A stretch of DNA of 64,000 nt, taken from positions 150,199 to 214,198 of the IMG/VR virus record IMGVR_UViG_3300048924_000100, one strand, 5' to 3'. The translations under genes and the position numbers were made by a program. Under the pieces are notes generated by a model. That model was not told the DNA's origin, made no database searches, and saw nothing but the letters and a program-made list of their open reading frames with translations. Within the stretch, counting starts at the first letter, position 1. Each line of letters starts with the position of its first letter. Shown here one piece after another: positions 45,723 through 58,006 of this stretch.

Positions 45723-48188
45723 ATGCTACTTAAACTAATTCTAGAGAACTATGTTCCACTCTTGAGTAGCAATATTCATAAAGTGGAACTCGATACCGAA
45801 CATATGATCAACCTCTTCATCTCGCTTAACGGCGTAGGCAAGAGCTCGATCCTCAAGGAGATGAACCCCCTACCGCCTGAGAATGGCAACTACGAGAATG
45901 GACGTAAGTTCGTTCAGTGGAAGGTTGGGAGTAAAGTCTACACCATGGACTCCTACACCGGCATTGGTAACGGTCACAGCTTCAAGATCGACGACGGTGA
46001 GGAACTCAACAAGAACGGTACCTTCAGCGTACAGAAAGAGTTGTGCGAAACACACTTTAAACTGGACAGCGGTATGGTTAAGGTGATCAGCGGTATTCGT
46101 ATTGCGGATCGCTTGTCGGCTATGTCTCCAGCCAGACGTAAAGACGTCCTCATGCAGATCTATCCGAATGACACCGACTATGCACTGGGTGTTTACAACC
46201 GCTTGAAGTCTGCTCGTAATGAATTGAAAGCAGCGATCAAGAACCAGGTGGCTCGTTATACCGAAGAGAACCGCAAGCTCTCTTACATTAACGAGTGTGG
46301 GGTAGAGGAATTGGAACGTCGTGTTCGCAGTGTAGAAGAAGAGCTGAAACAATCCCTTCTACTGCGCGGTAGTCTGGAATCGGTTAGACTGGATCCGGCT
46401 ACTCATGCCAAGAAGGTCGAACTCGATCTGTTGACAGACCAGTTACTCACCAACAAGCTCAGCCTGGTGTGGTTCAGCAAGCGTGAATACATCGACGCTA
46501 TCGAACAAGCCCGCCGTATGCTGGATGGTTACAGAGACCAGGCCAACGTGCTGCACGGTGTGATCAGTGAACACGCTGGCATGCTGGACGGCTTGGAAGA
46601 GTTCCTGAAGGATCCCGATACCTTTAAGGCTCAGACCAAACACGTTAAGAGCGACATTGCCGAGACTTTAATCAAGTTGGAACTGATCGACACGGCCCTC
46701 AAGCAATACCCGGTCTTCTGTGACCCTGAGAGCCCCCTGGACGGTCTTCCGCAGATAGTGTCGGCATTGGTACCGTTTCTTAATCGCGTGACTCCTGCGA
46801 GCACTACGGAGCTTACAGGTAACCAGTACAAGGCTTACCAAAGTCGTCTGGAAGTGGTGGCTACCACGCTACGCGATCTGAACAGCAATCTGTCTAACTG
46901 GCAGCACAAGTACAAGCACTACGAACAAGCCGAAACCGTTTCGTGTCCTGACTGTACCCATGAGTTCAAACTCGGGATGACACCTAAACAAGTCGGCGAA
47001 TTGAAAACGACCATTGACTACTCCTTGGGTCAGATCGCTAAATTAGAAGCCGAGAAGAAGGATCTCGAAAGTAAGCTGGAAAACGATTCGGAATGGTTTG
47101 TCAGCATGAACCAGTTGTTCGGGTTTATTCGCGAGAACAGCCACGTCCGTATCCTGCCTGAACTGGTTAAACAGTTTGAGGTAGGTCGTCACGCCAGTCC
47201 CCGTCTACAGAACGCCCTGGAACTCGTTAGCCGCAAAGCTGAGCTGTTAGGCTACCGTGACACCCTGAGCGAAGAAGAAAAGCTCCTGGACGCTCGTATC
47301 GCCCTCCTAGACCGTAATAAGGTATTGGATGTGGCGATCTACGTTAGCACCACTGAAAAAGAGCTGGTAGCGGTTAACAACAAGATCCTTTTCTACAAGG
47401 CCAAGATCGACGCGCTGAGCGGTACCCTACGGGGTATTCAAACCTATGGGGAAGATTTAAAGCGACTGGAACAATTGCGGTTCGAGATTCTGCAAGGTTT
47501 GGAGTATGAGGGTAAAGTAAATTTGCGTGTTGCGGTGGATCATCGCATCAGTGAATTGACCTCAGACAAAGAACACTACATGACCTCGATCATCAAGAGT
47601 CGTTCCCTGACAGCGGTGGTGCAATCCATCTCCGCCGACATCGCTCGCTTGAAACGACGCTTAACCATCGTTGAAGTGCATATGGACGGTCTGTGCCCTA
47701 ACAAGGGTTTGATCGGTAAGTTGATGAGTGACTTCATTAGCTCCATTTGCGGCAACATGAATGCGGTGGTTAACAAAATCTGGAACACCCCACTGTTCAT
47801 CAAACCGTGCAGCAAAGAGAACGGTGATCTGACCTACAAGTTCCCTGTGGTTAAAGGTGAGAAATCCCCTACCCCTGATGTAGCAGATTGCAGTGGCGGC
47901 GAAACTGATATTTTAGATTGGGCATTTCGCTTCGTGTTATTGGGGTACCTCGGATTCCCGCTTCCTCTGATCATGGATGAGGTGGGGCCATTCCTGGATG
48001 AAATCAAACGCGGCAGGTTCTTTAACTTTGTGGAGGAATACACACAGAGTAACGACGCCCGCCAACTGTTCCTGGTGTCCCATTACTTTAATCAGCTCGG
48101 GGTCTTCAGAGATCCTAACATCATTGCCTTGCGTTACGAAGGCCTTACTCTACCGGGTGAGGTGAACCAGCACTCAATAGTAATTTAA
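45723..48188 (+). CDS. sbcC: SbcC/Rad50-like SMC ATPase
   Basis: 821 aa. Walker A NGVGKSS, coiled coils, zinc hook CPDC, signature CSGGE, Walker B IMDE, H-loop LVSH. Confidence 0.9.
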   Translation: MLLKLILENYVPLLSSNIHKVELDTEHMINLFISLNGVGKSSILKEMNPLPPENGNYENGRKFVQWKVGSKVYTMDSYTGIGNGHSFKIDDGEELNKNGTFSVQKELCETHFKLDSGMVKVISGIRIADRLSAMSPARRKDVLMQIYPNDTDYALGVYNRLKSARNELKAAIKNQVARYTEENRKLSYINECGVEELERRVRSVEEELKQSLLLRGSLESVRLDPATHAKKVELDLLTDQLLTNKLSLVWFSKREYIDAIEQARRMLDGYRDQANVLHGVISEHAGMLDGLEEFLKDPDTFKAQTKHVKSDIAETLIKLELIDTALKQYPVFCDPESPLDGLPQIVSALVPFLNRVTPASTTELTGNQYKAYQSRLEVVATTLRDLNSNLSNWQHKYKHYEQAETVSCPDCTHEFKLGMTPKQVGELKTTIDYSLGQIAKLEAEKKDLESKLENDSEWFVSMNQLFGFIRENSHVRILPELVKQFEVGRHASPRLQNALELVSRKAELLGYRDTLSEEEKLLDARIALLDRNKVLDVAIYVSTTEKELVAVNNKILFYKAKIDALSGTLRGIQTYGEDLKRLEQLRFEILQGLEYEGKVNLRVAVDHRISELTSDKEHYMTSIIKSRSLTAVVQSISADIARLKRRLTIVEVHMDGLCPNKGLIGKLMSDFISSICGNMNAVVNKIWNTPLFIKPCSKENGDLTYKFPVVKGEKSPTPDVADCSGGETDILDWAFRFVLLGYLGFPLPLIMDEVGPFLDEIKRGRFFNFVEEYTQSNDARQLFLVSHYFNQLGVFRDPNIIALRYEGLTLPGEVNQHSIVI

Positions 48189-48191
48189 ACC

Positions 48192-48199
48192 TATATTAC
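48192..48199 (+). promoter_or_regulatory. Early promoter (aaaccTATATTAC)
   Basis: Exact phiKZ early consensus just after the sbcC stop; opens the accessory region. Confidence 0.75.
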
Positions 48200-48298
48200 T
48201 AGCAGGTAGAGACATAAGTGTCGTTGTCTCTTTTAGTTGTATTCGTACTGCAAGGTCCTGTTTATGACAGCCTACTACTTCTGGAAGAGATAACGATC

Positions 48299-48587: not shown

Positions 48588-49055
48588 ATGAATGTATTAA
48601 GGTTCTTTATCAAAGACCCGGATCGGTTTACCGAACCTTTTGAACCAGTAGTGGTGCAGTTCGCACTGGCTGGGGAAAAGGTTCTGGTAGAGGTAGGACT
48701 CGTTAAGGATAACGGAAGGTTGCATTTCTCTATCGGGAAGCGGTTAACTGGCGATGGATCGCTACTTATTCTAGACCAGAAGCCCGTGTCTTCTGTGTCG
48801 CAACTAACGTTCCAGGCACGTCCTAAACGTTGGAGTGAAAGTCCTCTGTATACCCGTGAGTTCCTCCGGCATGCTTTCGAGGATTTTGTTTTGAATTCGC
48901 CTTTCGAAGGCTTTATAAGAAAGAATGTGAATCCACTGGATATCACTCAAATGTTTGCCAAACTAAGGGACACGAGTTCCCACTTAATCAACTTTCAATT
49001 GGGTATAGGTCATGAGAAAGGACGACGTGATTGTACAGTACATGGCATTGGTTAG
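48588..49055 (+). CDS. Hypothetical protein
   Basis: 155 aa from ATG 48588. Confidence 0.55.
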   Translation: MNVLRFFIKDPDRFTEPFEPVVVQFALAGEKVLVEVGLVKDNGRLHFSIGKRLTGDGSLLILDQKPVSSVSQLTFQARPKRWSESPLYTREFLRHAFEDFVLNSPFEGFIRKNVNPLDITQMFAKLRDTSSHLINFQLGIGHEKGRRDCTVHGIG

Positions 49056-49449
49056 TGAGCTGGGCGAGAGCGCACACAACGTAGTACTGAGCGCTGGGTC
49101 GGCTGCTGTTATGATGGACATCCGCAATGAAACGGATGATTTGGACGTCGATGTATTGCCCGGTGTATTCAAGTGGGCAGCGAGTAGCAAGACGATCCTT
49201 AAAGAAGAAGGGGTCAACGATCGGATAAAGTATTCCGATAAGGTTGATCTGCACGTACTGGATGAAGACCGGGGAAGGGTTTGCATCGACGGCGTGTGGG
49301 TTTACAGTCCCCGTGAACTGCTTATGCAAAAACGTGCAATGCTCCGTATCCCTGGACGCGGCATGGGTAAGCTGGTGCGAGACCAGATCGAAATCACCCA
49401 GCTGGAACAAATGGGTCAATCAACTAAATTTACTGCTAAAGCTGTTTAG
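49012..49449 (+). CDS. Minimal nucleotidyltransferase (Pol-beta superfamily), catalytic motif intact
   Basis: 145 aa; VVLSAGSAAVMMDIRNETDDLDVDV (GS plus DxD) and a third acid in KVDLH. Confidence 0.7.
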   Translation: MRKDDVIVQYMALVSELGESAHNVVLSAGSAAVMMDIRNETDDLDVDVLPGVFKWAASSKTILKEEGVNDRIKYSDKVDLHVLDEDRGRVCIDGVWVYSPRELLMQKRAMLRIPGRGMGKLVRDQIEITQLEQMGQSTKFTAKAV

Positions 49450-49458
49450 GGAAGTACC

Positions 49459-49926
49459 ATGTTTAAACTTGAAGTTGATGTGTGGCTGGCCGCTAAAGAA
49501 CGTATCCTTAAGCAGCTCGCTGTCCTGACCGACCAAGAACGTATCCCGGTCGAGAGTATCTGTTTGGGCGGCAGTGCGGCAATGGTGCTGATGAGCATCC
49601 GTAACGAAGCACGCGATGTCAACGTGTGGGTGGATTCGCCTTACTTCGAACGTCTGGCTGAAGACCACAAAGTCCTGGTACACCCGCTGCGTGATTCGGT
49701 TGTGCACATTCCGGACACCGAGGTTTATGTCCGCCGTCGTAACCGTTACTTCCAAAGCCACACCCTGGATAACGGCATTGATGTATTCGACGAGCTGACC
49801 CTGCTGATACTCAAGCGCACCAGCTACATCGATCCACACCGGTCTCTGGAACAACGGGAGAAAGACTTCCGGGATATCCAGATTCTGAACGACCTTCTGG
49901 CTGTCCGTAATAAAGTTGCTCCTTGA
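49459..49926 (+). CDS. Nucleotidyltransferase-fold paralog with degenerate active site
   Basis: 155 aa; ICLGGSAAMVLMSIRNEARDVNVWV (DxN in place of DxD); C-terminal REKDFRDI motif. Confidence 0.65.
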   Translation: MFKLEVDVWLAAKERILKQLAVLTDQERIPVESICLGGSAAMVLMSIRNEARDVNVWVDSPYFERLAEDHKVLVHPLRDSVVHIPDTEVYVRRRNRYFQSHTLDNGIDVFDELTLLILKRTSYIDPHRSLEQREKDFRDIQILNDLLAVRNKVAP

Positions 49927-49997: not shown

Positions 49998-50291
49998 GTG
50001 ATGACTGCCATTATTGCATCGCTAATAAGCGTTGGTTGTCTTTTCTTTTTCCTCGAAATGACCACTGGGCCATGGAAGTGGCTAGACCGTCTTACGGGTT
50101 GGGATGATCATCCTTCGCCTAAAGAGATCAACCAGATCCAACTGGACATATTGCTGAACCAGGAAGACCTCAGCGTTAGAGGCAACCGGGTAATCTGCAA
50201 CGAATGTTTACGAGAGAGCTGCGGCTTCTGTTTAAACGGCCCTGTGATACGTCAGGCACAAGAATTGTTAGATACGCGGGGTGAGCTATGA
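49998..50291 (+). CDS. Small membrane protein with Cys4 motif
   Basis: 97 aa; N-terminal TM; CNEC...C..C; ATGA overlap with the ligase gene. Confidence 0.55.
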   Translation: MMTAIIASLISVGCLFFFLEMTTGPWKWLDRLTGWDDHPSPKEINQIQLDILLNQEDLSVRGNRVICNECLRESCGFCLNGPVIRQAQELLDTRGEL

Positions 50292-52258
50292 ATGTACCAA
50301 ACATCTACGAGATGATGAAAGCTCTCCAGGAAGAGATCACTCGCCTCAACACCGAGTTCCACCAGAATGACAAGGAATTGATTCCCAACGCTGAGTTCGA
50401 TCAGAAGCAGCTACGGTTTGATGAGCTGTGTGAACTCTATCCGGACGTTGCCAAAAGTCTGGTTACCGACAATGCCCCTGTTCCCATGGCGGCTCCTGTT
50501 GGTGGGCTAGAGCTTGTGGAATTCAAGGAACCCATGCTCAGCCTCAAAAAGGCCACGAGTATTGAAGCCTTGGATAAATGGCTGGGTAAGCTTCCACCGG
50601 ATGTTGTCGTTATCTGGGAGTTGAAGCTGGACGGGTTGGCGTTGGACCTGTTGTATGAGTTCCGTCAATTGGTACGTATGTGTACACGTCGGGATGGTTT
50701 GTTTGGTGAGGATGTTACTCACTCGATTAACCTGTTCAACAACATACCCCTGACGCTCCCTCCTGGCTACCCTGACGAGTTTTCTATTCGTGGTGAGGGG
50801 ATATTGCCGTTTGTTGCATTCGAGGCCTACAACGAGGCTGTAGAGAAGCCTATGGTTACTCCTCGTAATGCGGCAAGTGGTTGGGTACGTACCAGTCGTG
50901 GTAATCAGAATCCCGAAGCTGTGGGCAAACTACGTTTTATTGCGTACGGCTCCAGTAATCGATTCAGCGCCAAGACCTACATGGACCAGCGGAAGATGTT
51001 CCGGGAAGCCGGGTTTGAAGTGTCACCTGTTCTCTCCCTGGAAGATCTCAAGGGTGGTGAGCGTGATGATGTCTTGCCTACTGATGGTGTAGTGGGTAAG
51101 GTCAACAACTTCGAAACCCAGGAAGAACTGGGCGTAACCAACAAGTTCCCTAACTGGGGGATTGCTTACAAGTACCCGGATGAAGAGGTGGAGGCAGTTT
51201 ACGACCGTACTATCTGGAAAACAGGTAAGACCGGTCGAGTTAACCCAACCATCCTCTATCACCCTGTAAAGGTGGGCGGTGTAACCTGTAGTCGTGCAAG
51301 CATTGACAACTACCACCAGTTCATGGAGCTAGGACTGCGTGAGGACTCCACCCTGGCGGTTCGTCGTAACAACGATGTTATCCCACGGGTTCACCGTGTC
51401 ATTGATCCTGGAGCCGGTGAGCGGGTTAAAGCACCAGAAGAGTGTCCAAGCTGTGGTAGCAAGCTCCGGCTTAAAACCAGTGATGCAAGCGCCTTTCTAT
51501 ATTGCGACAACATTACCGGTTGCAAGAGTCAGTTGCTGAATCGTTGTTTGGCTTTTGTTAGCCGTGGATGTTTGGACATTGATGGTTTTGGTCCAGTGCT
51601 GCTGGCTGAGCTTATTGACCAAGGTGATGTCGAGTATCCGGCAGATATCCTGTTTCTGGATGCGGCTACGGTTAACGGTAACGTTTGGGAAAGCCTGAGT
51701 AATGTCTGGTTCACCCCGTTCCACAAAGCAATCCTGGCACTGGGGTTACCTGGTATCGATGTTATCCGAGCCAAGAAACTAGCAGTGGCCATGAATAAGG
51801 TTGGAACCGACCAAGGCTACCGCAATCCTGTTAGCTGGATTAACAGCGAAGTAGTTATCGAATGGCTGTCCAATAAAGACAACCTGAAGAAAATCCATGG
51901 CTTCGGTGCTAAGTTGGCAGACCCAATTGTGGCTGCCGTGAAGACTGATGCTTTCGTTAATAACTGTCGTCGGCTGTTCAAACGGATTGAAGTGACTTAC
52001 AAGGAGAATGTCACCGAACGGAAGATCTGTATCACTGGGGACGTGGGTCTTCCACGCGAAAGCTTAAAGGATCTCCTGGAACTGGCGGGTATTGAATTGG
52101 CGGATAGCTTCACCAAGGACTGCCAGTTACTTCTCGTGGGGGAGAAGCCAGGTGAAAAGAAACTGTTAAAAGCAACCGAGCTGGATATACCTATGGTAAC
52201 TATCGCCAGGGTTTCCAGTATTGAAGACTTGATCACACAGATCAATAACCATAGCTAA
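50288..52258 (+). CDS. ligA: NAD+-dependent DNA ligase
   Basis: 656 aa. KLDG motif I, RGEG, TDGVVGK, IAYK, DVIPRV, zinc finger CPSC..C..C, HhH motifs, C-terminal BRCT. Confidence 0.92.
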   Translation: MNVPNIYEMMKALQEEITRLNTEFHQNDKELIPNAEFDQKQLRFDELCELYPDVAKSLVTDNAPVPMAAPVGGLELVEFKEPMLSLKKATSIEALDKWLGKLPPDVVVIWELKLDGLALDLLYEFRQLVRMCTRRDGLFGEDVTHSINLFNNIPLTLPPGYPDEFSIRGEGILPFVAFEAYNEAVEKPMVTPRNAASGWVRTSRGNQNPEAVGKLRFIAYGSSNRFSAKTYMDQRKMFREAGFEVSPVLSLEDLKGGERDDVLPTDGVVGKVNNFETQEELGVTNKFPNWGIAYKYPDEEVEAVYDRTIWKTGKTGRVNPTILYHPVKVGGVTCSRASIDNYHQFMELGLREDSTLAVRRNNDVIPRVHRVIDPGAGERVKAPEECPSCGSKLRLKTSDASAFLYCDNITGCKSQLLNRCLAFVSRGCLDIDGFGPVLLAELIDQGDVEYPADILFLDAATVNGNVWESLSNVWFTPFHKAILALGLPGIDVIRAKKLAVAMNKVGTDQGYRNPVSWINSEVVIEWLSNKDNLKKIHGFGAKLADPIVAAVKTDAFVNNCRRLFKRIEVTYKENVTERKICITGDVGLPRESLKDLLELAGIELADSFTKDCQLLLVGEKPGEKKLLKATELDIPMVTIARVSSIEDLITQINNHS

Positions 52259-52271
52259 GGGAAGCAAACTC

Positions 52272-53771
52272 ATGACCACCGCAACTGAAAAGAAAGCCAA
52301 TGCAACCGAACAACAAAGTGCTCTGTCCAAACTCGCTATTCCGCACGTCAATCCCAAGCAAGTGGACAAAGCGGTTAAAGCGCTTGAAAAAGTTGCCGAC
52401 AAAGGTAAAGCGGTTTCTGCTGATAAGCCTCAACCGGTAAAGATCGTTAACAGCAGTTTTTCCGGCACTAACGGCGCTAAAGTGAAACCTAAAGGCATGG
52501 GCCTGTCGCCATCGCACGGCAAAGTCCTTTCCGAAACCGTGGAAGAAGCTGTCGGCCGCATCAAGATGGATCCACCGCGGTTTGGACTGGCTAACGGACC
52601 ATGGGGTGGCTTGGAACTCAAGTACTACTCCAAGGAAGAGCTGGCCGCTATGAAGACTCCTTGGGTCATGGTCAAGGGTGTGTTGATCGAACCGAAGCAG
52701 ACAGGTATCAAGGAAGCCGGTCGCATCTCCACCGACTCCGGCCATACCTTCTGGCTGAACATGCCACGCGCTCTTTATCGCGAGAAAGAAGAACCACGCG
52801 TCTTCTCGCACTACGTGATCGAGTCGGACGGTATTACTGTGCAGCTGCTCCTCGACGAGAAGTCGTCTGTGCAGATCAACAGCTTCGACATCTATCGCGG
52901 TGGCTACCAGGCGATGGACATCAACCGTCATATGGTCAACCAAGCCGTTCTGACGAATACCGACAGCACCCACGATACCTTCCTGGGTGAAGTGATTCTG
53001 GAGAACCAGTCGACCAACAGTTGCGTGTTCAACAGTTCCACCGTCAGTTCGCAACCACGCTTTGATCAGCAGCAAGCACCTTGGGTGGTGCAGCGTAACC
53101 GCGAATCCCCTCGTCAGGTTTTGAAGTACTCGTCGCTCAGCCGTTCGTCGGTGTTCAACAGTGTGATCAGTGATTCGATCCAGCTGTTGGATACCACGAT
53201 TGACGACAGTAATATCAAAACCAACGAGGGCTTCTCTGCGGCTAACTCGCGTTTGAAGGAAGCTACCATCAAGGGTCACCGTGCACGCCTGAAGTTTGCG
53301 CAACTGGAAAAGACTTACATTCCTTCGACCGGTTCTATCCTCATCGTGAACACCATCATGAAGGACGAATCCCTGGGCGACAAACCGCTGTACGTCCCGA
53401 ACAAGTTCTGCACGCTGAAAGTTGACCTGCCGCATGATCATCTGTCCATGCGCCGTGAAACGCTGACGAAGGTTGGCATTACCGTTGGCTATCGTCAGCC
53501 GGTTGATATCGAGATCGACGCCACGATGGATGTGATCGACGCCAAGGTCCGCGAAGTACTGCGCGACTCCAGCTACCACAATCCGCTTGATCCTGACATG
53601 AAGGACCCGGTGGTTTCCAATCTGATCCATTACGTAGTGCAAGCGATTCGTTCGCGTCTGCGTGTGATCAAGATGCTGGACAGCGCTGTCCGTACGGCTC
53701 GTGTGGTAACCGGTGAAGCTTTCCGGGACGAGAGTGAGTACGGCGACTTCTCGTACCAGCGTCCGTTTTAA
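52272..53771 (+). CDS. Hypothetical protein with Lys/Ala-rich N-terminus and beta-helix-like repeats
   Basis: 499 aa; biased codon usage; periodic Ser/Asn/Ile/Leu pattern in the central-C-terminal part. Confidence 0.7.
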   Translation: MTTATEKKANATEQQSALSKLAIPHVNPKQVDKAVKALEKVADKGKAVSADKPQPVKIVNSSFSGTNGAKVKPKGMGLSPSHGKVLSETVEEAVGRIKMDPPRFGLANGPWGGLELKYYSKEELAAMKTPWVMVKGVLIEPKQTGIKEAGRISTDSGHTFWLNMPRALYREKEEPRVFSHYVIESDGITVQLLLDEKSSVQINSFDIYRGGYQAMDINRHMVNQAVLTNTDSTHDTFLGEVILENQSTNSCVFNSSTVSSQPRFDQQQAPWVVQRNRESPRQVLKYSSLSRSSVFNSVISDSIQLLDTTIDDSNIKTNEGFSAANSRLKEATIKGHRARLKFAQLEKTYIPSTGSILIVNTIMKDESLGDKPLYVPNKFCTLKVDLPHDHLSMRRETLTKVGITVGYRQPVDIEIDATMDVIDAKVREVLRDSSYHNPLDPDMKDPVVSNLIHYVVQAIRSRLRVIKMLDSAVRTARVVTGEAFRDESEYGDFSYQRPF

Positions 53772-53782
53772 TCCCTAACCAT

Positions 53783-53811
53783 AACCCACCCTACTAACCA
53801 TGGGGTGGGTT
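53783..53811 (+). terminator. Hairpin, possible terminator
   Basis: Stem aacccaccc/gggtgggtt; U-tract short. Confidence 0.45.
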
Positions 53812-53824
53812 TAAGAGAATCGTT

Positions 53825-54307
53825 ATGAGCAAGAAAGAACCCCCTATTACCTACAAGGTGCATACGGACGGCAGTGCGCTGGGTAACCCAGGTCCTGGAG
53901 GTTATGGGATTGTAGCGAGATGCGGAGACGAGGTTGTCACACTCTCGAAAGGTTACAAGCGTACGACTAATAACCGTATGGAACTCTTGGGCGTAATTGT
54001 AGCCCTTGAGACAAACGCTAAGCCCGGTGTACTGTTTGAGATCACCACAGATTCCATGTACGTGATCAATGGCGCTACCAAGTGGATCAGCAGCTGGCAG
54101 CGTAGCAACTGGATCACCTGGAAGACCCAGGAGCCTGTGAAGAACAAAGACCTGTGGCAGCGGATCGCTCCTTTGCTTAAAGCCAACAAGGTTAAGTTCT
54201 TCTGGGTTAAAGGCCATACGGGCGTACCGGATAACGAGCTGGCAGACAAGCTGGCGGTAGAAGCGGCTAACAATCCAACTGAAGTCGACGAAGGCTTCCT
54301 GGGGTAA
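53825..54307 (+). CDS. rnhA: Ribonuclease HI
   Basis: 160 aa; TDGSALGNPGPGGYG, TTNNRMEL, TDSMYV, VKNKDLW, WVKGH..N..ADKLA. Confidence 0.95.
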   Translation: MSKKEPPITYKVHTDGSALGNPGPGGYGIVARCGDEVVTLSKGYKRTTNNRMELLGVIVALETNAKPGVLFEITTDSMYVINGATKWISSWQRSNWITWKTQEPVKNKDLWQRIAPLLKANKVKFFWVKGHTGVPDNELADKLAVEAANNPTEVDEGFLG

Positions 54308-54311
54308 TCAA

Positions 54312-54593
54312 GTGTCTAACGCTAAATGCGCATTTAAATACGTCGTGTTCCTTAACGGCATCGTCACCCACTTCCGCAACATGACCCTCGGTCGCGGTAA
54401 CAGCAAGAGCATGACGCAAGTGGCTGAACATCGCTTCTCCCGTTGTATCCAGCGCATCGTGATTACAAAAATCGTGCCTGCTCCTTCCGAGCTGACGCCA
54501 GAAGTACTTTACGCCGGACGACTGGACATGGCGGTAGATGAGGCCATTGCTGATGGCAGCGCTCACAAGCTGTTCAGTAAGTACGCGCGCTAA
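54312..54593 (+). CDS. Small basic hypothetical protein
   Basis: 93 aa, GTG start, biased codon usage. Confidence 0.55.
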   Translation: MSNAKCAFKYVVFLNGIVTHFRNMTLGRGNSKSMTQVAEHRFSRCIQRIVITKIVPAPSELTPEVLYAGRLDMAVDEAIADGSAHKLFSKYAR

Positions 54594-54623
54594 CAACAAC
54601 ATTCATTAGGGGGACGTGGGGCA

Positions 54624-55547
54624 ATGGCTTTGAAGACTGATACTGAGTTTAAACCTGTTCTGTGCATCTATCACAAAGACTGTCTGGACGGCATCGGTGC
54701 CGCATGGGTGGTGTGGCGCCATTTCAAGAACATGGGTATTGACATCGAGTTGGTGGCTGCTGCTTACAAAGACAAGCTGCCGGTCGTCGATGGCAAGGTG
54801 GTTTACGTAGTTGACTTCAGTTATCCGCGCGATGTCATGGTAGAACTGTTAGGGCGTGCGCATGACGTGGTGGTTCTGGATCACCATACCAGTGCCAAAA
54901 GAAACCTGGAAGGGCTCTTCGTTGTCGACGAGAGTCATTCTGGCGCCATGCTGGCCTGGAAGTATTTCAATAGCACTCCTCCACCAGAAGGTTTGCTGTA
55001 CGTTGAAGACCGAGACCTGTGGAAGTTCAAATACCCGAATACCAACAATTGGGTAACCGCAGCGTTCTCCTATCCGTTCAACGTTGAGCAGTTCGATGCA
55101 CTGATGAACAGCGACCCACTGGACCTCATCCACGAGGGCAAGATCCTGTTGCGTAAGCACCAGCAAGACACCGGTCGTGTAGCATTGAACGCCCGCATGA
55201 TGAAGTGCATGGGGTATACGGTACCCGTGGTAAACGCCAACATTTTCTTTGCGTCTGACCTGGGCGACATGCTCTCCAAGGATTACCCGTTCGCACTGAT
55301 CTACATGGATCTACCACACGGACGTAAGTACTCCATTCGCTGCCAGAAGAAGTGTATGGACGTTTCCAAGATCGCCGAATACTTTGGTGGTGGCGGTCAT
55401 GCTGACGCCTCGGGTTTCTCGATCCGTTATGACGACAAGCGTTTTGCCCGTAGTCATGAAGTGCTCGACTATTCGTTGCGCGACAAGATCATGGCTTATC
55501 TGAAGAACCCAATCGTCACGCTGAAGTTTCTACTAGGGAAGAAGTAA
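54624..55547 (+). CDS. DHH/DHHA1 phosphoesterase (NrnB/nanoRNase-like)
   Basis: 307 aa; HKDCLDG, VVDFS, LDHH, EDRDLW, GGGGHADASGF. Confidence 0.88.
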   Translation: MALKTDTEFKPVLCIYHKDCLDGIGAAWVVWRHFKNMGIDIELVAAAYKDKLPVVDGKVVYVVDFSYPRDVMVELLGRAHDVVVLDHHTSAKRNLEGLFVVDESHSGAMLAWKYFNSTPPPEGLLYVEDRDLWKFKYPNTNNWVTAAFSYPFNVEQFDALMNSDPLDLIHEGKILLRKHQQDTGRVALNARMMKCMGYTVPVVNANIFFASDLGDMLSKDYPFALIYMDLPHGRKYSIRCQKKCMDVSKIAEYFGGGGHADASGFSIRYDDKRFARSHEVLDYSLRDKIMAYLKNPIVTLKFLLGKK

Positions 55548-55835
55548 ATGCGGGCAGTCAAATTCTTTCGTTACGCTGGGATCTGGCGTTATAAAGAGAT
55601 CGGCAAGGATGTGGCGGACAAGGTAGATACGCGTGCCCTGGAAAGCATCCTGGGGGTCATGGGTGGTCCGTTGGTGTATGTTTGCCGTGACACTGGTAAG
55701 CCAGAGATGGAGAAGCTGCGCATCGAAGTGCGTAACGGGTTTGTCGTCCGCGCTTCTATGGCGGAACACGACAACGTACCTTTTGCTGAAGGTACCGAAG
55801 TCGAAGAGTTCTACATTCGACCATTGAGCAATTAA
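55548..55835 (+). CDS. Hypothetical protein
   Basis: 95 aa, abuts the DHH gene stop. Confidence 0.6.
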   Translation: MRAVKFFRYAGIWRYKEIGKDVADKVDTRALESILGVMGGPLVYVCRDTGKPEMEKLRIEVRNGFVVRASMAEHDNVPFAEGTEVEEFYIRPLSN

Positions 55836-55848
55836 AGAGATGCGACTC

Positions 55849-56016
55849 ATGGAAAGCGATAACCTGTTCTTTGTAGAAAGTGATCGTTACGGGTTCGGGT
55901 ACCTGATGGCCCCAGAGCGTTATGACGATATCCTCATCGCCACCGAGCGGCTGAAGACCCGTATCCAATCAGGCGCCACCCTGGTGCGTGTGGAAGTCAA
56001 ACGTACCAAGGGTTAA
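55849..56016 (+). CDS. Small hypothetical protein (55 aa, absent from ORF track)
   Basis: Hand-translated MESDNLFFVESDRYGFGYLMAPERYDDILIATERLKTRIQSGATLVRVEVKRTKG; fills the gap between neighbours. Confidence 0.55.
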   Translation: MESDNLFFVESDRYGFGYLMAPERYDDILIATERLKTRIQSGATLVRVEVKRTKG

Positions 56017-56020
56017 GCAC

Positions 56021-56470
56021 ATGAAACCGGATTACAGTTACATCAGTGTGCAGCTTAAGTCAGAGATGCAGGCCGAGATCATTTCTACTCTGATCCTGGC
56101 GGGTATCTCTCCAGAAGCCAAACATGAACTACACGCCACCATGGTGTATGACGATCGCAGCATCGCAGCGCCGTTGTGCGACCTGGCGCCATCTTCCAAG
56201 GAATTCTCGGCGAACGTCATTGCCCTGGAAACTTTGGGGGACGGTCTGGTGTTCAAACTCACCAGCGTTGATATGCTGGAAGAGTTTCGCCGTTTAAAGG
56301 AAGCCGGGTATCAACACTCTTACGGCACGCCTTTGTTCCACATGTCGCTGAAGTATGACTTCGATAAGTATGACATCCTCGCGCTTAATCAGGCGTTTGC
56401 TAATTGGGGTGGTCGTACGCTGATCTTCAACAACGAGCAGTACGGTATCACGAAACCAAAGAAAACGTAA
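56021..56470 (+). CDS. acb1: Acb1-like 2H phosphodiesterase (anti-CBASS nuclease family)
   Basis: 149 aa from ATG 56021. HAT (H38) and HMS (H107) motifs 69 residues apart, as recalled for T4 Acb1 H44/H113; N-terminal YISV strand; LVFKLTS segment. Confidence 0.72.
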   Translation: MKPDYSYISVQLKSEMQAEIISTLILAGISPEAKHELHATMVYDDRSIAAPLCDLAPSSKEFSANVIALETLGDGLVFKLTSVDMLEEFRRLKEAGYQHSYGTPLFHMSLKYDFDKYDILALNQAFANWGGRTLIFNNEQYGITKPKKT

Positions 56471-56477
56471 CTCGGTA

Positions 56478-56528
56478 CTACTCCTACTCCCTTTATCGGG
56501 GAGTAGGAGTAGGATACCTTTATTTTTT
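56478..56528 (+). terminator. Intrinsic terminator closing the rnhA-DHH-acb1 operon
   Basis: Stem ctactcctactccc/gggagtaggagtag followed by a T-rich tract. Confidence 0.8.
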
Positions 56529-56557
56529 GCTTTTTGAGTTACAGCTTATTTCAGAAC

Positions 56558-56565
56558 TACATCAT
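56558..56565 (+). promoter_or_regulatory. Possible early promoter variant (aacTACATCAT)
   Basis: Degenerate match upstream of the 46-aa ORF. Confidence 0.35.
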
Positions 56566-56606
56566 CCGTGTGTATAAACAACATACTTCTTTTAGGAGTT
56601 ATCGAA

Positions 56607-56857: not shown

Positions 56858-58006
56858 ATGAATACCAAGAACCAAGAAGTTGCCAACATCGCTTCCATGA
56901 TGGTAGCGGTCATCACCCAACTTCGTACTGATGGCGCACCGGAGCCGATTCAATTGGCTTATGCTAAAACGGTGATGATGGATCAGGAACAGGTCAATAC
57001 TCGTGACCGCCAGCCTGTGCTTCAACTGGTGAACAACCAGCTCGGTACCAAATGGTCTTTCAACCAGATCAAGAAAGCCGAGAACTTCGTCCAGAACAAT
57101 GAACCAATCAAGGTTCAAGAACTGAACGGTACTGCACAGGTCAATGTCTCCGGCCAACCTGCTGAAGCCACTTTCGTTGAGAAGGCTCCTCAGGTTGATG
57201 GCCACGTGCACCTGCAACAAACCAACAACGCAGAAACCACTGCGCCTGACCAAGCCGGTCAAACTTCTTCTATCAACTCCACTGCAAACGAACAGGAAAA
57301 CGACACCATGAACGCACAAGTAAACGCTACCTCCAACATCGCTGAAAACGTTAAAGCCTTCGCACTGGCCATGTCCCTGGTCGGCCGCAACACCGCTGAA
57401 CAACGCGCCGAAGCCTGGACCGCGTTCATTGCTACCTCGCCTGAACAAGCTGCTCTGTGGGCTCTGTTCTCGGCAACTGCTGACGCCACCAAGTCGTTCG
57501 ACGAGAACTTCGTCACGTTCAGCGAAGGCCTGGGCGAAGAAGAAGGCAAGACTCTGGTCACCAACTTCATGCGCTGGTCTGCAGCTAACCAGCCAAAAGG
57601 TGATGCTCACTACTCCGACAAGTCGCGTTACAGCCTGATGGGCGATCGTGACGAAGGCATTCGTACCAGCTGGATCGCAGTAGGCTCCGCAGTGATCGGC
57701 GGTGGTATGGAAGCATTCGCCCGTGGTGGTCTGAACGTCGGTTCGGCGGTCGGTACCGTAGTGGGTGGTGTTGCTGCATTCTTCGCTGGTGAGCAGGTTG
57801 ACCAGCACGTAGAGAGCCAGTTCGGTCGCTACGTAGTCGGCGGCATGATCGGTCTGGGCCTGGGTGGTGCTGGTGCGGCCCTGGGTCGTAGCGTCCTGCC
57901 TGGTAACCCACTGCTCGAAATGAACAACAACGTCGCTGCTGCACCGGCTCGTATCGAAGCTCAGCCTACCGCGCCACAAGGCTCGCTCGGCTTCTTCGGC
58001 ATGTAA
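56858..58006 (+). CDS. Early protein with C-terminal glycine-zipper membrane domain
   Basis: 382 aa, CAGGAG RBS, extreme codon bias; C-terminus aligns with 20642-20974 (GDR[ND][DE]G[VI] plus GxxxG helices). Confidence 0.75.
   Translation: MNTKNQEVANIASMMVAVITQLRTDGAPEPIQLAYAKTVMMDQEQVNTRDRQPVLQLVNNQLGTKWSFNQIKKAENFVQNNEPIKVQELNGTAQVNVSGQPAEATFVEKAPQVDGHVHLQQTNNAETTAPDQAGQTSSINSTANEQENDTMNAQVNATSNIAENVKAFALAMSLVGRNTAEQRAEAWTAFIATSPEQAALWALFSATADATKSFDENFVTFSEGLGEEEGKTLVTNFMRWSAANQPKGDAHYSDKSRYSLMGDRDEGIRTSWIAVGSAVIGGGMEAFARGGLNVGSAVGTVVGGVAAFFAGEQVDQHVESQFGRYVVGGMIGLGLGGAGAALGRSVLPGNPLLEMNNNVAAAPARIEAQPTAPQGSLGFFGM

What the first reader, a model, noticed from the sequence alone, without database searches (positions are those of the whole stretch)
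53825..56528. One operon joins RNase HI, a DHH/DHHA1 nanoRNase-like enzyme and the Acb1-like enzyme: candidate two-step signal-destruction module
Seen: six tightly packed same-strand genes (rnhA, 93 aa, DHH, 95 aa, 55 aa, 2H-PDE) with no internal hairpin noticed and one strong terminator. Known: DHH-DHHA1 enzymes hydrolyse short linear oligonucleotides, pAp or cyclic dinucleotides, and Acb1 linearises cyclic signals. Inference: the 2H enzyme opens the ring and DHH finishes it to mononucleotides. The three small ORFs could be sponges or accessory inhibitors. Alternative: primer removal and nucleotide recycling.
Basis: inference. Interest (0 to 1): 0.65.

Follow-up and report, generated by a model that had tools for sequence, protein, structure and literature searches.

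The report
Jumbo-phage operon: RNase HI, DHH, Acb1
The six-gene cluster is real and sits in an uncultured nucleus-forming jumbo phage. Comparative genomics suggests the DHH enzyme is a dispensable add-on that entered a conserved replication-gene block once. It does not look like a dedicated partner of the Acb1-like signal-degrading enzyme.

Summary
Six same-strand genes are spaced 0-30 nt apart: RNase HI, a 93-aa ORF, DHH/DHHA1, a 95-aa ORF, a 55/58-aa ORF and an Acb1-like 2H enzyme. They end at a strong terminator. The predicted transcription unit is longer, about 48.2-56.5 kb, and also carries NAD-ligase.

The genome is a 214-kb root-metagenome phage related to Pseudomonas phage EL. It encodes a chimallin homologue.

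The family assignments hold:
- RNase HI passes the NCBIfam equivalog cut-off.
- The 2H protein passes Pfam Acb1, keeps an invariant HxT/HxS tetrad and is closest in fold to solved Acb1 structures.
- The DHH protein resembles stand-alone NrnA/NrnB-type dinucleotide and nanoRNA phosphodiesterases.

The two-step interpretation gets little support. The arrangement conserved across chimalliviruses is ligase...RNase HI...2H. DHH lies in a variable slot, appears to have been gained once in the EL-like clade, and is absent from two near-complete genomes inside that clade that keep the 2H gene. Elsewhere this DHH family occurs without a linked Acb1: 76 of 77 non-jumbo loci, and several other large phages. 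In PaBG, Magneto and ME3 it sits beside replication, repair or nucleotide-metabolism genes. Acb1's published product has a 5'-OH and a 3'-phosphate, which is not the canonical substrate of NrnA-type enzymes.

Coupling is neither shown nor excluded.

The parts
48180..48203 (+). Promoter-like motif (AAACCTATATTAC type). It matches the promoters annotated in phage EL and is the predicted start of the transcription unit.
   Evidence: PWM score 19.4. EL's annotated promoters carry the same core. A site lies at the same place, about 2.1-2.4 kb upstream of ligase, in L003-L006. Reading it as an early promoter is an inference from PMC7598289.
48218..50291 (+). Five small genes of unknown function at the head of the unit. 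Two are paralogues of phrog_12854.
50288..52258 (+). NAD-dependent DNA ligase (656 aa).
   Evidence: PF01653 at 7.9e-39, PF03120, BRCT; phrog_3869 at 4.8e-144.
52272..53771 (+). Conserved 499-aa protein of unknown function. It always lies between ligase and RNase HI in relatives.
   Evidence: No family hit. Homologues sit at the same position in EL, L003-L009 and L095-L104.
53783..53811 (+). Conserved 11-bp hairpin just upstream of the rnhA ribosome-binding site. It has no long U-tract. It could be an attenuator, a processing site or a stabilising element.
   Evidence: -17.8 kcal/mol, z = -2.2. Five of 11 pairs show compensatory double changes among 5 relatives and none is broken.
53825..54307 (+). 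RNase HI (160 aa).
   Evidence: NF001236 equivalog, 165.4 bits against a cut-off of 160; PF00075 at 1.6e-42. The DEDD and His motif residues can be read in the sequence.
54312..54593 (+). 93-aa ORF (GTG start) of unknown function, found only in the closest relatives.
   Evidence: Homologues in L003/L095 and L006/L096 only, 68-77% identity. No family hit.
54624..55547 (+). Stand-alone DHH/DHHA1 phosphoesterase (307 aa), NrnA/NrnB-like.
   Evidence: phrog_4771 at 5.3e-83. Invariant H17/C20/D22, D64, D86-H87-H88, D129/D131 and GGGGH 255-259. AlphaFold2 pLDDT 93. Best folds are NrnA, TmPDE, PggH, Rv2837c and GdpP, plus DHH proteins of giant viruses and jumbo phages.
55548..55835 (+). 95-aa protein of a conserved small family of unknown function. 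Its position within the slot varies.
   Evidence: Alignment A3, 14 members, including genomes that lack DHH. No Pfam, PDB or Atlas hit.
55840..56016 (+). 58-aa (or 55-aa) protein of a small conserved family. Members usually lie directly upstream of the 2H gene and are sometimes duplicated.
   Evidence: Alignment A4, 13 members; positions; no PDB hit.
56021..56470 (+). Acb1-like 2H phosphodiesterase (149 aa), last gene of the unit.
   Evidence: PF23474, 32.4 bits against a cut-off of 27. Invariant H38xT40 and H107xS109. A PDB profile search gives its best and only significant hit to an Acb1 chain, 9q2g at 0.0096; all other hits, Acb1 or unrelated, are above 0.2. AlphaFold2 pLDDT 89. Best folds are 9q2y, 9q2g, 7t26 and 7t27.
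56474..56535 (+). Intrinsic terminator: a 19-bp-class hairpin followed by a T-run.
   Evidence: -31.5 kcal/mol, z = -6.2. Nearly invariant in four relatives.
56546..56569 (+). Promoter-like motif that starts the next unit.
   Evidence: PWM score 20.1. Conserved in L003-L006. A comparable site lies downstream of the 2H gene, before the next large gene, in L007, L008, L097, L100, L102 and L103.

Best explanation
The six genes are the distal part of an operon of about 8.3 kb (window 48.2-56.5 kb). The phage is an EL-related jumbo phage that encodes chimallin, so it is probably nucleus-forming. By analogy with other jumbo phages the operon is probably an early one.

The operon is a mosaic rather than a pathway. 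Its conserved backbone is NAD-ligase, a 499-aa unknown, RNase HI, a variable slot, then the Acb1-like 2H phosphodiesterase. The backbone lies just downstream of an SbcC-like nuclease gene.

The slot between RNase HI and the 2H gene gains and loses accessory genes. The DHH/DHHA1 enzyme apparently entered it once, in the ancestor of the EL-like clade, and was later lost in one sublineage.

Most likely roles (inferred):
- RNase HI and ligase serve lagging-strand maturation.
- DHH is an NrnA/NrnB-type enzyme that degrades very short oligonucleotides and dinucleotides. That is clean-up and nucleotide recycling allied to replication and repair.
- The 2H enzyme acts alone as a metal-independent phosphodiesterase on adenosine-containing cyclic di- and trinucleotide immune signals.

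DHH could incidentally consume linearised signal, but it is neither required for nor dedicated to the Acb1-like enzyme.

Shown: gene order, family membership, conservation pattern and regulatory motifs. Inferred: substrates, timing and co-transcription.
For: - Cluster and families.
- Unit boundaries. Promoter-like sites lie only at 48180 and 56546 in this stretch. In 17 related loci such sites lie upstream of the ligase block and downstream of the 2H gene, never between ligase and 2H. The terminator-promoter spacer is nearly invariant.
- Ligase...RNase HI...2H without DHH: RisingSun, pTD1 and PDCC-1 and L108 and L109.
- DHH present between RNase HI and 2H in 10 of 20 loci found with the 2H profile.
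- G002 (100% complete) and G003 (96%) keep the 2H gene and have no DHH genome-wide. Positive controls matched.
- In the RnhA+2H tree the DHH-positive loci form one clade, with the DHH-less pair nested inside.
- Of the 80 best DHH loci from IMG/VR, kept out of 436 relatives, only the 3 jumbo loci and 1 other carry an Acb1-like gene within the flanks.
- Independent contexts of this DHH family: between SbcC and SbcD beside a clamp loader in PaBG; 1 kb from RNase H and near a dNMP phosphatase in Magneto; beside a metallophosphoesterase and a helicase in ME3. In the window an SbcC-like gene immediately precedes the unit.
- PaBG has both genes, 45 kb apart.
- The DHH fold is shared with giant eukaryotic viruses.
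- The 2H protein is closest to Acb1 by Pfam, by profile and by fold. A canonical Acb1 recruits it in jackhmmer. In Serratia phage BF the homologue sits among NAMPT, Sir2 and Nudix genes.
Against: - No biochemical or RNA data exist for any of these proteins.
- Within the EL-like clade DHH always lies 0-2 kb upstream of the 2H gene on the same strand. That placement is also what a functional pair would show.
- A 2026 preprint reports that a mimivirus DHH degrades 3'3'-cGAMP and other messengers, and that one phage DHH blocks 3'3'-cGAMP signalling to STING in cells. An anti-signalling role for this DHH is therefore plausible.
- L080 shows a second, independent DHH...Acb1 neighbourhood, 3 kb apart.
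- The replication and repair contexts of DHH elsewhere are also only guilt by association.
- The gain-and-loss scenario rests on an unsupported FastTree topology with midpoint rooting.
Confidence: 0.5

Rival explanations
1. The Acb1-like enzyme opens cyclic di- or trinucleotide signals, and DHH then hydrolyses the linear products to mononucleotides. The two would form a dedicated two-step signal-destruction module, with the small ORFs as accessory binders.
For: - DHH and 2H lie on the same strand in one predicted unit, 0-2 kb apart, in every DHH-positive member of the clade.
- The nearest DHH folds are enzymes that finish pApA or pGpG to mononucleotides: TmPDE, PggH, Rv2837c and Pde2.
- One independent neighbourhood, L080.
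Against: - The clade-wide linkage goes back to a single gain event.
- DHH was lost while the 2H gene was kept in G002 and G003.
- 76 of 77 non-jumbo DHH loci lack an Acb1-like gene.
- PaBG has both genes 45 kb apart.
- Many phages with the 2H gene have no DHH at all.
- Ring opening already inactivates the signal. Acb1's product carries a 5'-OH and a 3'-phosphate, unlike the 5'-phosphorylated substrates of NrnA-type enzymes.
- cA3 would be cut at every adenosine by Acb1 alone (inferred).
- The small ORFs match no sponge family.
Confidence: 0.15
2. A parallel dual-phosphodiesterase cassette. DHH is itself an anti-signalling enzyme that covers messengers Acb1 cannot cut, such as c-di-GMP, c-di-AMP or larger rings. 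The two enzymes would broaden the spectrum side by side rather than in series.
For: - T4 Acb1 does not cleave cGG or cA4 (PMC9117128).
- A mimivirus DHH degrades 3'3'-cGAMP and several other messengers, and one phage DHH blocks 3'3'-cGAMP-STING signalling in cells (bioRxiv 10.64898/2026.07.21.739742).
- The model has the ordered inter-domain helix (residues 165-187) that the preprint describes for its mixed viral and cellular groups.
- Placement in a variable accessory slot.
Against: - There is no substrate evidence for this subfamily.
- In other large phages the family sits among replication, repair and nucleotide-metabolism genes.
- The family is also present in giant viruses of amoebae. The preprint found its mimivirus DHH dispensable in an amoeba host that has no known cGAMP synthases.
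- No PADLOC or anti-defence family hit.
Confidence: 0.2
3. The 2H protein is not an immune-evasion enzyme. It would be an RNA or nucleotide end-processing enzyme (LigT/CPDase-like, acting on 2',3'-cyclic phosphates) working with RNase HI, ligase and DHH in a nucleic-acid maintenance block.
For: - Its stable linkage to RNase HI and NAD-ligase across three chimallivirus lineages.
- PHROG and RefSeq label the family 'RNA ligase'.
- Plant CPDase and LigT are the next-best folds.
Against: - Pfam Acb1 is passed above its gathering score.
- The only significant PDB hit by profile is an Acb1 chain, and the five best fold matches are all Acb1-family entries.
- A canonical Acb1 recruits the family in jackhmmer.
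- In Serratia phage BF the homologue lies among NAD-salvage genes.
- RNase HI products carry no cyclic phosphate (established enzymology).
Confidence: 0.1

Closest known systems
Acb1 (T4 gene 57B; phage FBB1 Acb1, PDB 7T26/7T27; Burkholderia phage BCSR5 phosphodiesterase, PDB 9Q2G/9Q2Y)
   Same: 2H fold; two catalytic His-x-Thr/Ser motifs; about 150 aa; Pfam PF23474 passed; best structural and profile matches.
   Different: Only 12-19% identity to the solved proteins. The second motif is HxS rather than HxT. The gene is fixed at the end of a ligase/RNase HI operon in chimalliviruses. Activity and substrate range are untested.
Stand-alone DHH-DHHA1 phosphodiesterases: NrnA, NrnB, Rv2837c/CnpB, T. 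maritima PDE, PggH, Pde2
   Same: Two-domain architecture of about 300 aa; DHH and GGGH motifs; these are the top Foldseek hits. IMG names relatives 'oligoribonuclease NrnB/cAMP/cGMP phosphodiesterase'.
   Different: The protein fails the NrnA and RecJ equivalog models by a wide margin. Motif I reads H-x-N/D-C-x-D-G with an invariant Cys. The subfamily is largely viral, found in jumbo phages and giant viruses.
Bacterial two-step cyclic-dinucleotide turnover (GdpP or EAL/HD-GYP opens the ring, then NrnA, Pde2, Orn or PggH finishes)
   Different: The bacterial intermediates are 5'-phosphorylated with a 3'-OH. Acb1 leaves a 5'-OH and a 3'-phosphate. No viral example is described in the papers searched.
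Pseudomonas phage EL gp122-gp127
   Same: Same order: ligase, unknown, RNase H, DHH, 2H, unknown. Same promoter motif flanking the block.
   Different: 39-54% protein identity. EL's DHH is annotated with an N-terminal extension of about 100 aa. The 93-, 95- and 58-aa ORFs are not detected in EL.
Viral DHH phosphodiesterases reported to degrade cGAMP (mimivirus R106 and a phage DHH, 2026 preprint)
   Same: DHH-DHHA1 fold with an ordered inter-domain helix; virus-encoded.
   Different: No identity with the tested proteins was established here, and the substrates of this subfamily are unknown.

Membership tests
Acb1 (PF23474) | Score above Pfam's gathering cut-off | tested here: met
   32.4 bits against a cut-off of 27, E = 8.8e-8. 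All 17 database homologues carry PF23474.
Acb1 (PF23474) | HxT/HxT catalytic tetrad of the 2H fold | tested here: met
   H38-x-T40 and H107-x-S109 are invariant in 20 sequences, with Ser replacing the second Thr. The tetrad is defined in PMC9117128.
Acb1 (PF23474) | Fold closest to solved Acb1 rather than other 2H enzymes | tested here: met
   Ranks 1-5 are 9q2y, 9q2g, 7t26 and 7t27 (E 1.8e-6 to 6e-5, TM 0.56-0.70). CPDase and LigT score lower.
Acb1 (PF23474) | [quoted passage not shown] | not testable with these tools
   Needs enzyme assays and infection assays.
DHH/DHHA1 superfamily | DHH motifs I-IV and the DHHA1 GGGH motif | tested here: met
   D22, D64, D86-H87-H88, D129/D131 and GGGGH 255-259 are invariant in 45 sequences. 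PF01368 scores 28.3 against 28.1. PF02272 scores 23.4, below its cut-off of 25.9. phrog_4771 at 5e-83.
NrnA (NF053633 equivalog) | Equivalog score cut-off | tested here: not met
   16.2 bits against a cut-off of 350. The resemblance is at fold level only.
RecJ (TIGR00644, NF053576) | Equivalog score, plus the extra OB or C-terminal domains | tested here: not met
   11-23 bits against cut-offs of 360-397. The protein is 307 aa with only two domains.
RNase HI (NF001236) | Equivalog score and the DEDD catalytic residues | tested here: met
   165.4 bits against a cut-off of 160. The TDGS, NNRMEL, TDS and GH...NE.AD motifs can be read in the translation.
Known nucleotide sponges (Acb2, Tad1, Tad2, Acb4), tested for the three small ORFs | Sequence match to a described sponge family | tested here: not met
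   No Pfam, PHROG, NCBIfam or PADLOC hit. No PDB profile hit. No Atlas lead.
Single operon | One promoter, one terminator and co-transcription | tested here: inconclusive
   Motif and terminator positions and their conservation support one unit spanning 48.2-56.5 kb. No RNA data are available. A conserved hairpin before rnhA could modulate read-through.
Chimalliviridae (nucleus-forming phages) | Encodes the major nuclear shell protein chimallin and phiKZ-type multisubunit RNA polymerases | tested here: met
   G000 105724-107805 matches phrog_4795 'nuclear shell protein' at 2.9e-115. Homologues of phiKZ gp055, gp071 and gp074 are present. The full set of 21 signature genes was not checked.

The most novel reading that the evidence does not exclude
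EL-like nucleus-forming phages carry a two-enzyme cassette against nucleotide signalling, at the end of an early operon. An Acb1-like 2H phosphodiesterase and a viral-type DHH/DHHA1 phosphodiesterase together, in series or in parallel, would clear a wider range of cyclic and linear immune messengers than either enzyme alone. The conserved 55-aa protein directly upstream of the 2H gene would act as a partner or regulator.
Probability: 0.15. Interest if true: 0.6.

Novelty: new member of a known kind. Interest (0 to 1): 0.38.

Why it matters
Nucleus-forming phages shield their DNA, but they remain exposed to defences that kill the cell through diffusible nucleotide signals. That makes their signal-degrading enzymes of real interest.

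This work shows that an Acb1-like gene is a stable feature of a ligase/RNase HI operon in several chimallivirus lineages. It also shows that a largely viral DHH subfamily, shared with giant eukaryotic viruses, was inserted next to it in the EL-like clade.

If the two enzymes cooperate, it would be the first viral multi-enzyme pathway for destroying immune messengers. If they do not, the locus is an example of a conserved gene neighbourhood arising from one insertion followed by vertical descent.

Phage EL is cultivable, so the question can be tested directly.

Tried and rejected
- Megablast of the region against GenBank phages found nothing.
- A single-sequence PDB search with the 2H protein returned only spurious repeat-protein hits. 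The profile search was needed.
- PADLOC gave no relevant hit.
- The Atlas search on the 95-aa ORF gave no lead. PDB profile searches and Pfam scans on the 95-aa and 58-aa families gave nothing.
- A search for RNA runs found only DNA metagenomes. Read laying was therefore not used, and co-transcription could not be examined.
- The phiKZ chimallin sequence found no match in the genome directly. The syntenic ORF did match the PHROG shell-protein family.
- A general DHH-RNase H association was considered. It holds in Magneto but not in 77 non-jumbo loci, by a single-sequence phmmer search that may miss divergent RNase H.
- RecJ-like ssDNA exonuclease identity was considered and rejected on domain content and scores.
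- Complex prediction was not run, because the report does not claim that the proteins bind.
- The large representative search was not used, because family scans settled the identities.


Full report
**1. Observation**

| Gene | Window coordinates | Length |
|---|---|---|
| rnhA | 53825-54307 | 160 aa |
| 93-aa ORF (GTG start) | 54312-54593 | 93 aa |
| DHH/DHHA1 | 54624-55547 | 307 aa |
| 95-aa ORF | 55548-55835 | 95 aa |
| small ORF | 55840-56016 | 58 aa, or 55 aa from the ATG at 55849 |
| 2H gene | 56021-56470 | 149 aa |

- The 55-aa start of the small ORF is the one that lines up with its relatives.
- The ATG at 56021 follows an AAGGG ribosome-binding site.
- The gaps between genes are 4, 30, 0, 4 and 4 nt.
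- Directly after the last stop codon lies a hairpin at 56474-56518. It folds at -31.5 kcal/mol with z = -6.2, no shuffle of 200 is as stable, and a T-run follows.
- The consensus scan reports no terminator-like site on the + strand inside the cluster.

**2. The genome**

- The window is the last 64 kb of a single 214,198-bp contig.
- Only a root-metagenome DNA run holds the region in full, and no RNA run holds it.
- The nearest cultured relatives are Pseudomonas phage EL and its kin, at roughly 40-54% protein identity.
- The genome encodes a chimallin homologue (phrog_4795, E = 2.9e-115).
- It also encodes homologues of the phiKZ multisubunit RNA polymerase subunits, DNA polymerase and helicase.

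It is therefore a chimallin-encoding jumbo phage and presumably forms a phage nucleus.

**3. The proteins**

*RNase HI*
- It passes NCBIfam's RNase HI equivalog model, 165.4 bits against a cut-off of 160.

*The 2H protein*
- It passes Pfam's Acb1 model, 32.4 bits against 27.
- In an alignment of 20 relatives, H38-x-T40 and H107-x-S109 are invariant.
- A profile of that alignment finds one significant match in the whole PDB, the Acb1 chain 9q2g (E = 0.0096). Two further Acb1 chains and two unrelated chains score above E = 0.2.
- The AlphaFold2 model (pLDDT 89) is closest to the Burkholderia phage BCSR5 phosphodiesterase and phage FBB1 Acb1, ahead of plant CPDase and LigT.
- A canonical Acb1 from an unrelated contig recruits the jumbo-phage proteins in jackhmmer.

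*The DHH protein*
- It is a two-domain protein with all DHH motifs and the GGGGH motif invariant across 45 relatives.
- Its model (pLDDT 93) is closest to stand-alone nanoRNase and dinucleotide phosphodiesterases: mycobacterial NrnA, T. maritima PDE, PggH, Rv2837c, Pde2 and the GdpP catalytic domain.
- It fails the NrnA and RecJ equivalog models by a wide margin.
- Among viral models it is closest to DHH proteins of marseilleviruses, pithoviruses and klosneuviruses, and of jumbo phages such as PaBG.

*The three small ORFs*
- They match no family, solved structure or Atlas cluster.
- The 95-aa and 55/58-aa proteins nevertheless belong to small families conserved across the clade.
- The 93-aa ORF occurs only in the closest relatives.

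**4. The transcription unit**

- Phage EL's record annotates putative promoters with the core AAACCTACATTATT.
- A weight matrix built from such sites finds 17 sites in this genome, 16 of them on the + strand.
- In this stretch the sites lie at window 48180, at the end of an SbcC-like gene, and at 56546, just after the terminator. None lies between them.
- In 17 related loci such sites lie upstream of the ligase block and downstream of the 2H gene, and never between ligase and 2H.
- The terminator-promoter spacer is almost invariant among four relatives whose flanking proteins differ by 15-25%.
- According to a review of jumbo-phage RNA polymerases, motifs found this way have proved to be early promoters wherever they were tested (PMC7598289).

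The six genes are therefore best read as the distal part of a presumptive early operon of about 8.3 kb. That operon also holds five small unknown genes, NAD-ligase and a 499-aa unknown.

A conserved 11-bp hairpin lies just before rnhA. Five of its pairs show compensatory changes and none is broken. It may modulate read-through or transcript stability.

All of this section is inference from sequence. No RNA data were available.

**5. Is the DHH-2H linkage conserved, and what does that mean?**

*Within the clade the linkage is conserved.*
- The order ligase, ~500-aa unknown, RNase HI, variable small genes, DHH, 0-4 small genes, 2H, ~400-aa unknown is found in four close IMG/VR relatives and in phage EL.
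- It is also found in three more distant contigs with DHH identities of 56%, 50% and 37%.
- Further IMG/VR loci show the same order.

*The wider pattern is different.*
- Erwinia phage RisingSun and Vibrio/Photobacterium phages pTD1 and PDCC-1 keep ligase...RNase HI...2H but have no DHH anywhere in their genomes.
- Of 20 loci recovered with the 2H profile, 10 carry DHH.
- Two genomes that fall inside the DHH-positive clade, G002 (100% complete) and G003 (96%), keep the 2H gene and the small families but have no DHH genome-wide. Three positive controls matched in the same search.
- A tree of RnhA+2H places all DHH-positive loci in one clade, with that DHH-less pair nested inside and the DHH-less lineages outside. 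This is a FastTree topology with midpoint rooting and no support values examined.

The simplest history is one gain and one loss of DHH in a slot that also exchanges other genes. RisingSun, for example, carries SspB-like and DHFR genes there. Clade-wide linkage therefore counts as one evolutionary event.

**6. DHH and Acb1 outside the clade**

- Of the 80 best DHH loci from IMG/VR, kept out of 436 relatives, only the three on jumbo contigs have the 2H gene nearby.
- One further locus, L080, has a canonical Acb1 (Pfam E = 2e-38) 3 kb downstream. One in 77 is no more than occasional co-occurrence.
- Vibrio phage H20, Caulobacter phage Magneto, Klebsiella phage KpLz-2_45 and Acinetobacter phage ME3 have this DHH and no Acb1.
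- Pseudomonas phage PaBG has both genes, 45 kb apart.
- Serratia phage BF has the 2H gene and no DHH.

The contexts of DHH in other large phages point to nucleic-acid metabolism:

| Phage | Genes beside DHH |
|---|---|
| PaBG | between SbcC and SbcD, next to a clamp loader |
| Magneto | 1 kb from RNase H, near a dNMP phosphatase |
| ME3 | metallophosphoesterase and helicase |
| smaller phages (most common neighbours) | DUF2303, C5 methylase, dNMP kinase |

In the window itself the unit follows an SbcC-like gene. By contrast, the 2H homologue of Serratia phage BF lies among NAMPT, Sir2, Nudix and cytidylyltransferase genes. From my own knowledge, not tested here, that is a neighbourhood typical of NAD-salvage counter-defence.

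**7. Chemistry**

- Acb1 cleaves 3' of adenosine through a cyclic-phosphate intermediate.
- It leaves G[3'-5']pAp[3'], which has a 5'-OH and a 3'-phosphate.
- Ring opening is already enough to inactivate the signal.
- The stand-alone DHH-DHHA1 enzymes closest in fold were solved with 5'-phosphorylated dinucleotides such as pApA (entry titles).

A direct hand-off is therefore not the obvious chemistry. It is not excluded either, because from my own knowledge, not tested here, these enzymes also remove the 3'-phosphate of pAp.

A 2026 preprint reports that a mimivirus DHH degrades 3'3'-cGAMP and other messengers. It also reports that one phage DHH blocks 3'3'-cGAMP signalling to STING in cells. 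This keeps a parallel anti-signalling role open. No paper in the searched library links a phage DHH with Acb1.

**8. Compartments**

In nucleus-forming phages, ligase and other DNA-processing proteins are imported into the phage nucleus, while metabolic enzymes stay in the cytoplasm (PMC12908238). Immune messengers act in the cytoplasm. Genes of one operon may therefore work in different compartments, which weakens operon membership as evidence of a shared pathway.

**9. Verdict**

- The cluster, the families and the conserved linkage are real.
- The best-supported reading is a mosaic early operon. It has replication enzymes, an accessory NrnA/NrnB-like DHH enzyme acquired once, and an independently acting Acb1-like phosphodiesterase as its last gene.
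- The two-step model (about 0.15) and a parallel dual-phosphodiesterase model (about 0.2) remain possible and are easy to test in phage EL.
- Novelty is modest. These are new members of known enzyme families in a gene arrangement not described in the papers searched.

**10. Limits**

- There is no biochemical or transcript evidence.
- Neighbourhood surveys used the best 80 and 20 loci, not whole collections.
- Absence calls rest on profile searches with stated controls.
- The gain-and-loss scenario rests on an unsupported tree.
- Read laying, complex prediction and the large representative search were not used.

Noticed in passing
window 53783-53811: An 11-bp hairpin lies between the 499-aa gene and rnhA. 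Five pairs show compensatory changes among five relatives and none is broken. It is followed by UUUAA and the rnhA ribosome-binding site. It could be an attenuator, a processing site or a stabilising element.
   Followed up: partly
window 56474-56600: The spacer after the 2H gene (terminator hairpin, T-run and promoter-like motif) is almost invariant among relatives whose flanking proteins differ by 15-25%. That suggests strong selection on the regulatory elements.
   Followed up: partly
genome G000, 17 sites; window 15247, 48180, 56546, 58696: A promoter-like motif (AAACCTA[C/T]ATTA) is shared with the promoters annotated in phage EL. Sixteen of the 17 sites are on the + strand. By analogy it is probably the early (virion RNA polymerase) promoter.
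   Followed up: partly
G000:C1:105724-107805 (outside the window): A chimallin (nuclear shell protein) homologue, phrog_4795 at 2.9e-115. It follows a promoter-like site and precedes a homologue of the phiKZ gp055 RNA polymerase subunit.
   Followed up: yes
window 55840-56016; L016, L098, L101: The family of the 55/58-aa protein usually lies directly upstream of the 2H gene. It is present in two or three copies in some relatives. It is also present in genomes that lack DHH.
   Followed up: partly
window 49012-49449 and 49459-49926: Two adjacent paralogues of phrog_12854 (unknown function) lie at the head of the same predicted unit.
   Followed up: no
window 45723-48188: An 821-aa SbcC-like protein (phrog_77, 2.3e-66) lies immediately upstream of the unit. 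In phage PaBG the DHH gene lies between SbcC and SbcD.
   Followed up: partly
L013 (Serratia phage BF) 3520-9379: The 2H homologue sits among cytidylyltransferase, nicotinamide phosphoribosyltransferase, Sir2 and Nudix genes. This looks like an NAD-salvage or counter-defence island.
   Followed up: no
L080 3149-4018 and 7059-7535: A small non-jumbo viral contig carries this DHH family and a canonical Acb1 (Pfam 2e-38) 3 kb apart on the same strand. It is the only such case among 77 non-jumbo DHH loci.
   Followed up: partly
L002 (Erwinia phage RisingSun) 5992-6426: The 2H homologue is labelled 'putative structural protein' in the GenBank records of RisingSun and Joad and 'RNA ligase' in RefSeq. 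Whether it is a virion protein was not checked.
   Followed up: no
window 54624-55547 (model m4d479705366d): This DHH subfamily is structurally closest to DHH proteins of giant eukaryotic viruses (marseilleviruses, pithoviruses, klosneuviruses), at 23-30% identity and TM-scores up to about 0.76.
   Followed up: partly
window 56858-58006: The 382-aa protein downstream has a glycine-rich, hydrophobic C-terminal part and no family match. Homologues follow the 2H gene throughout the clade.
   Followed up: no
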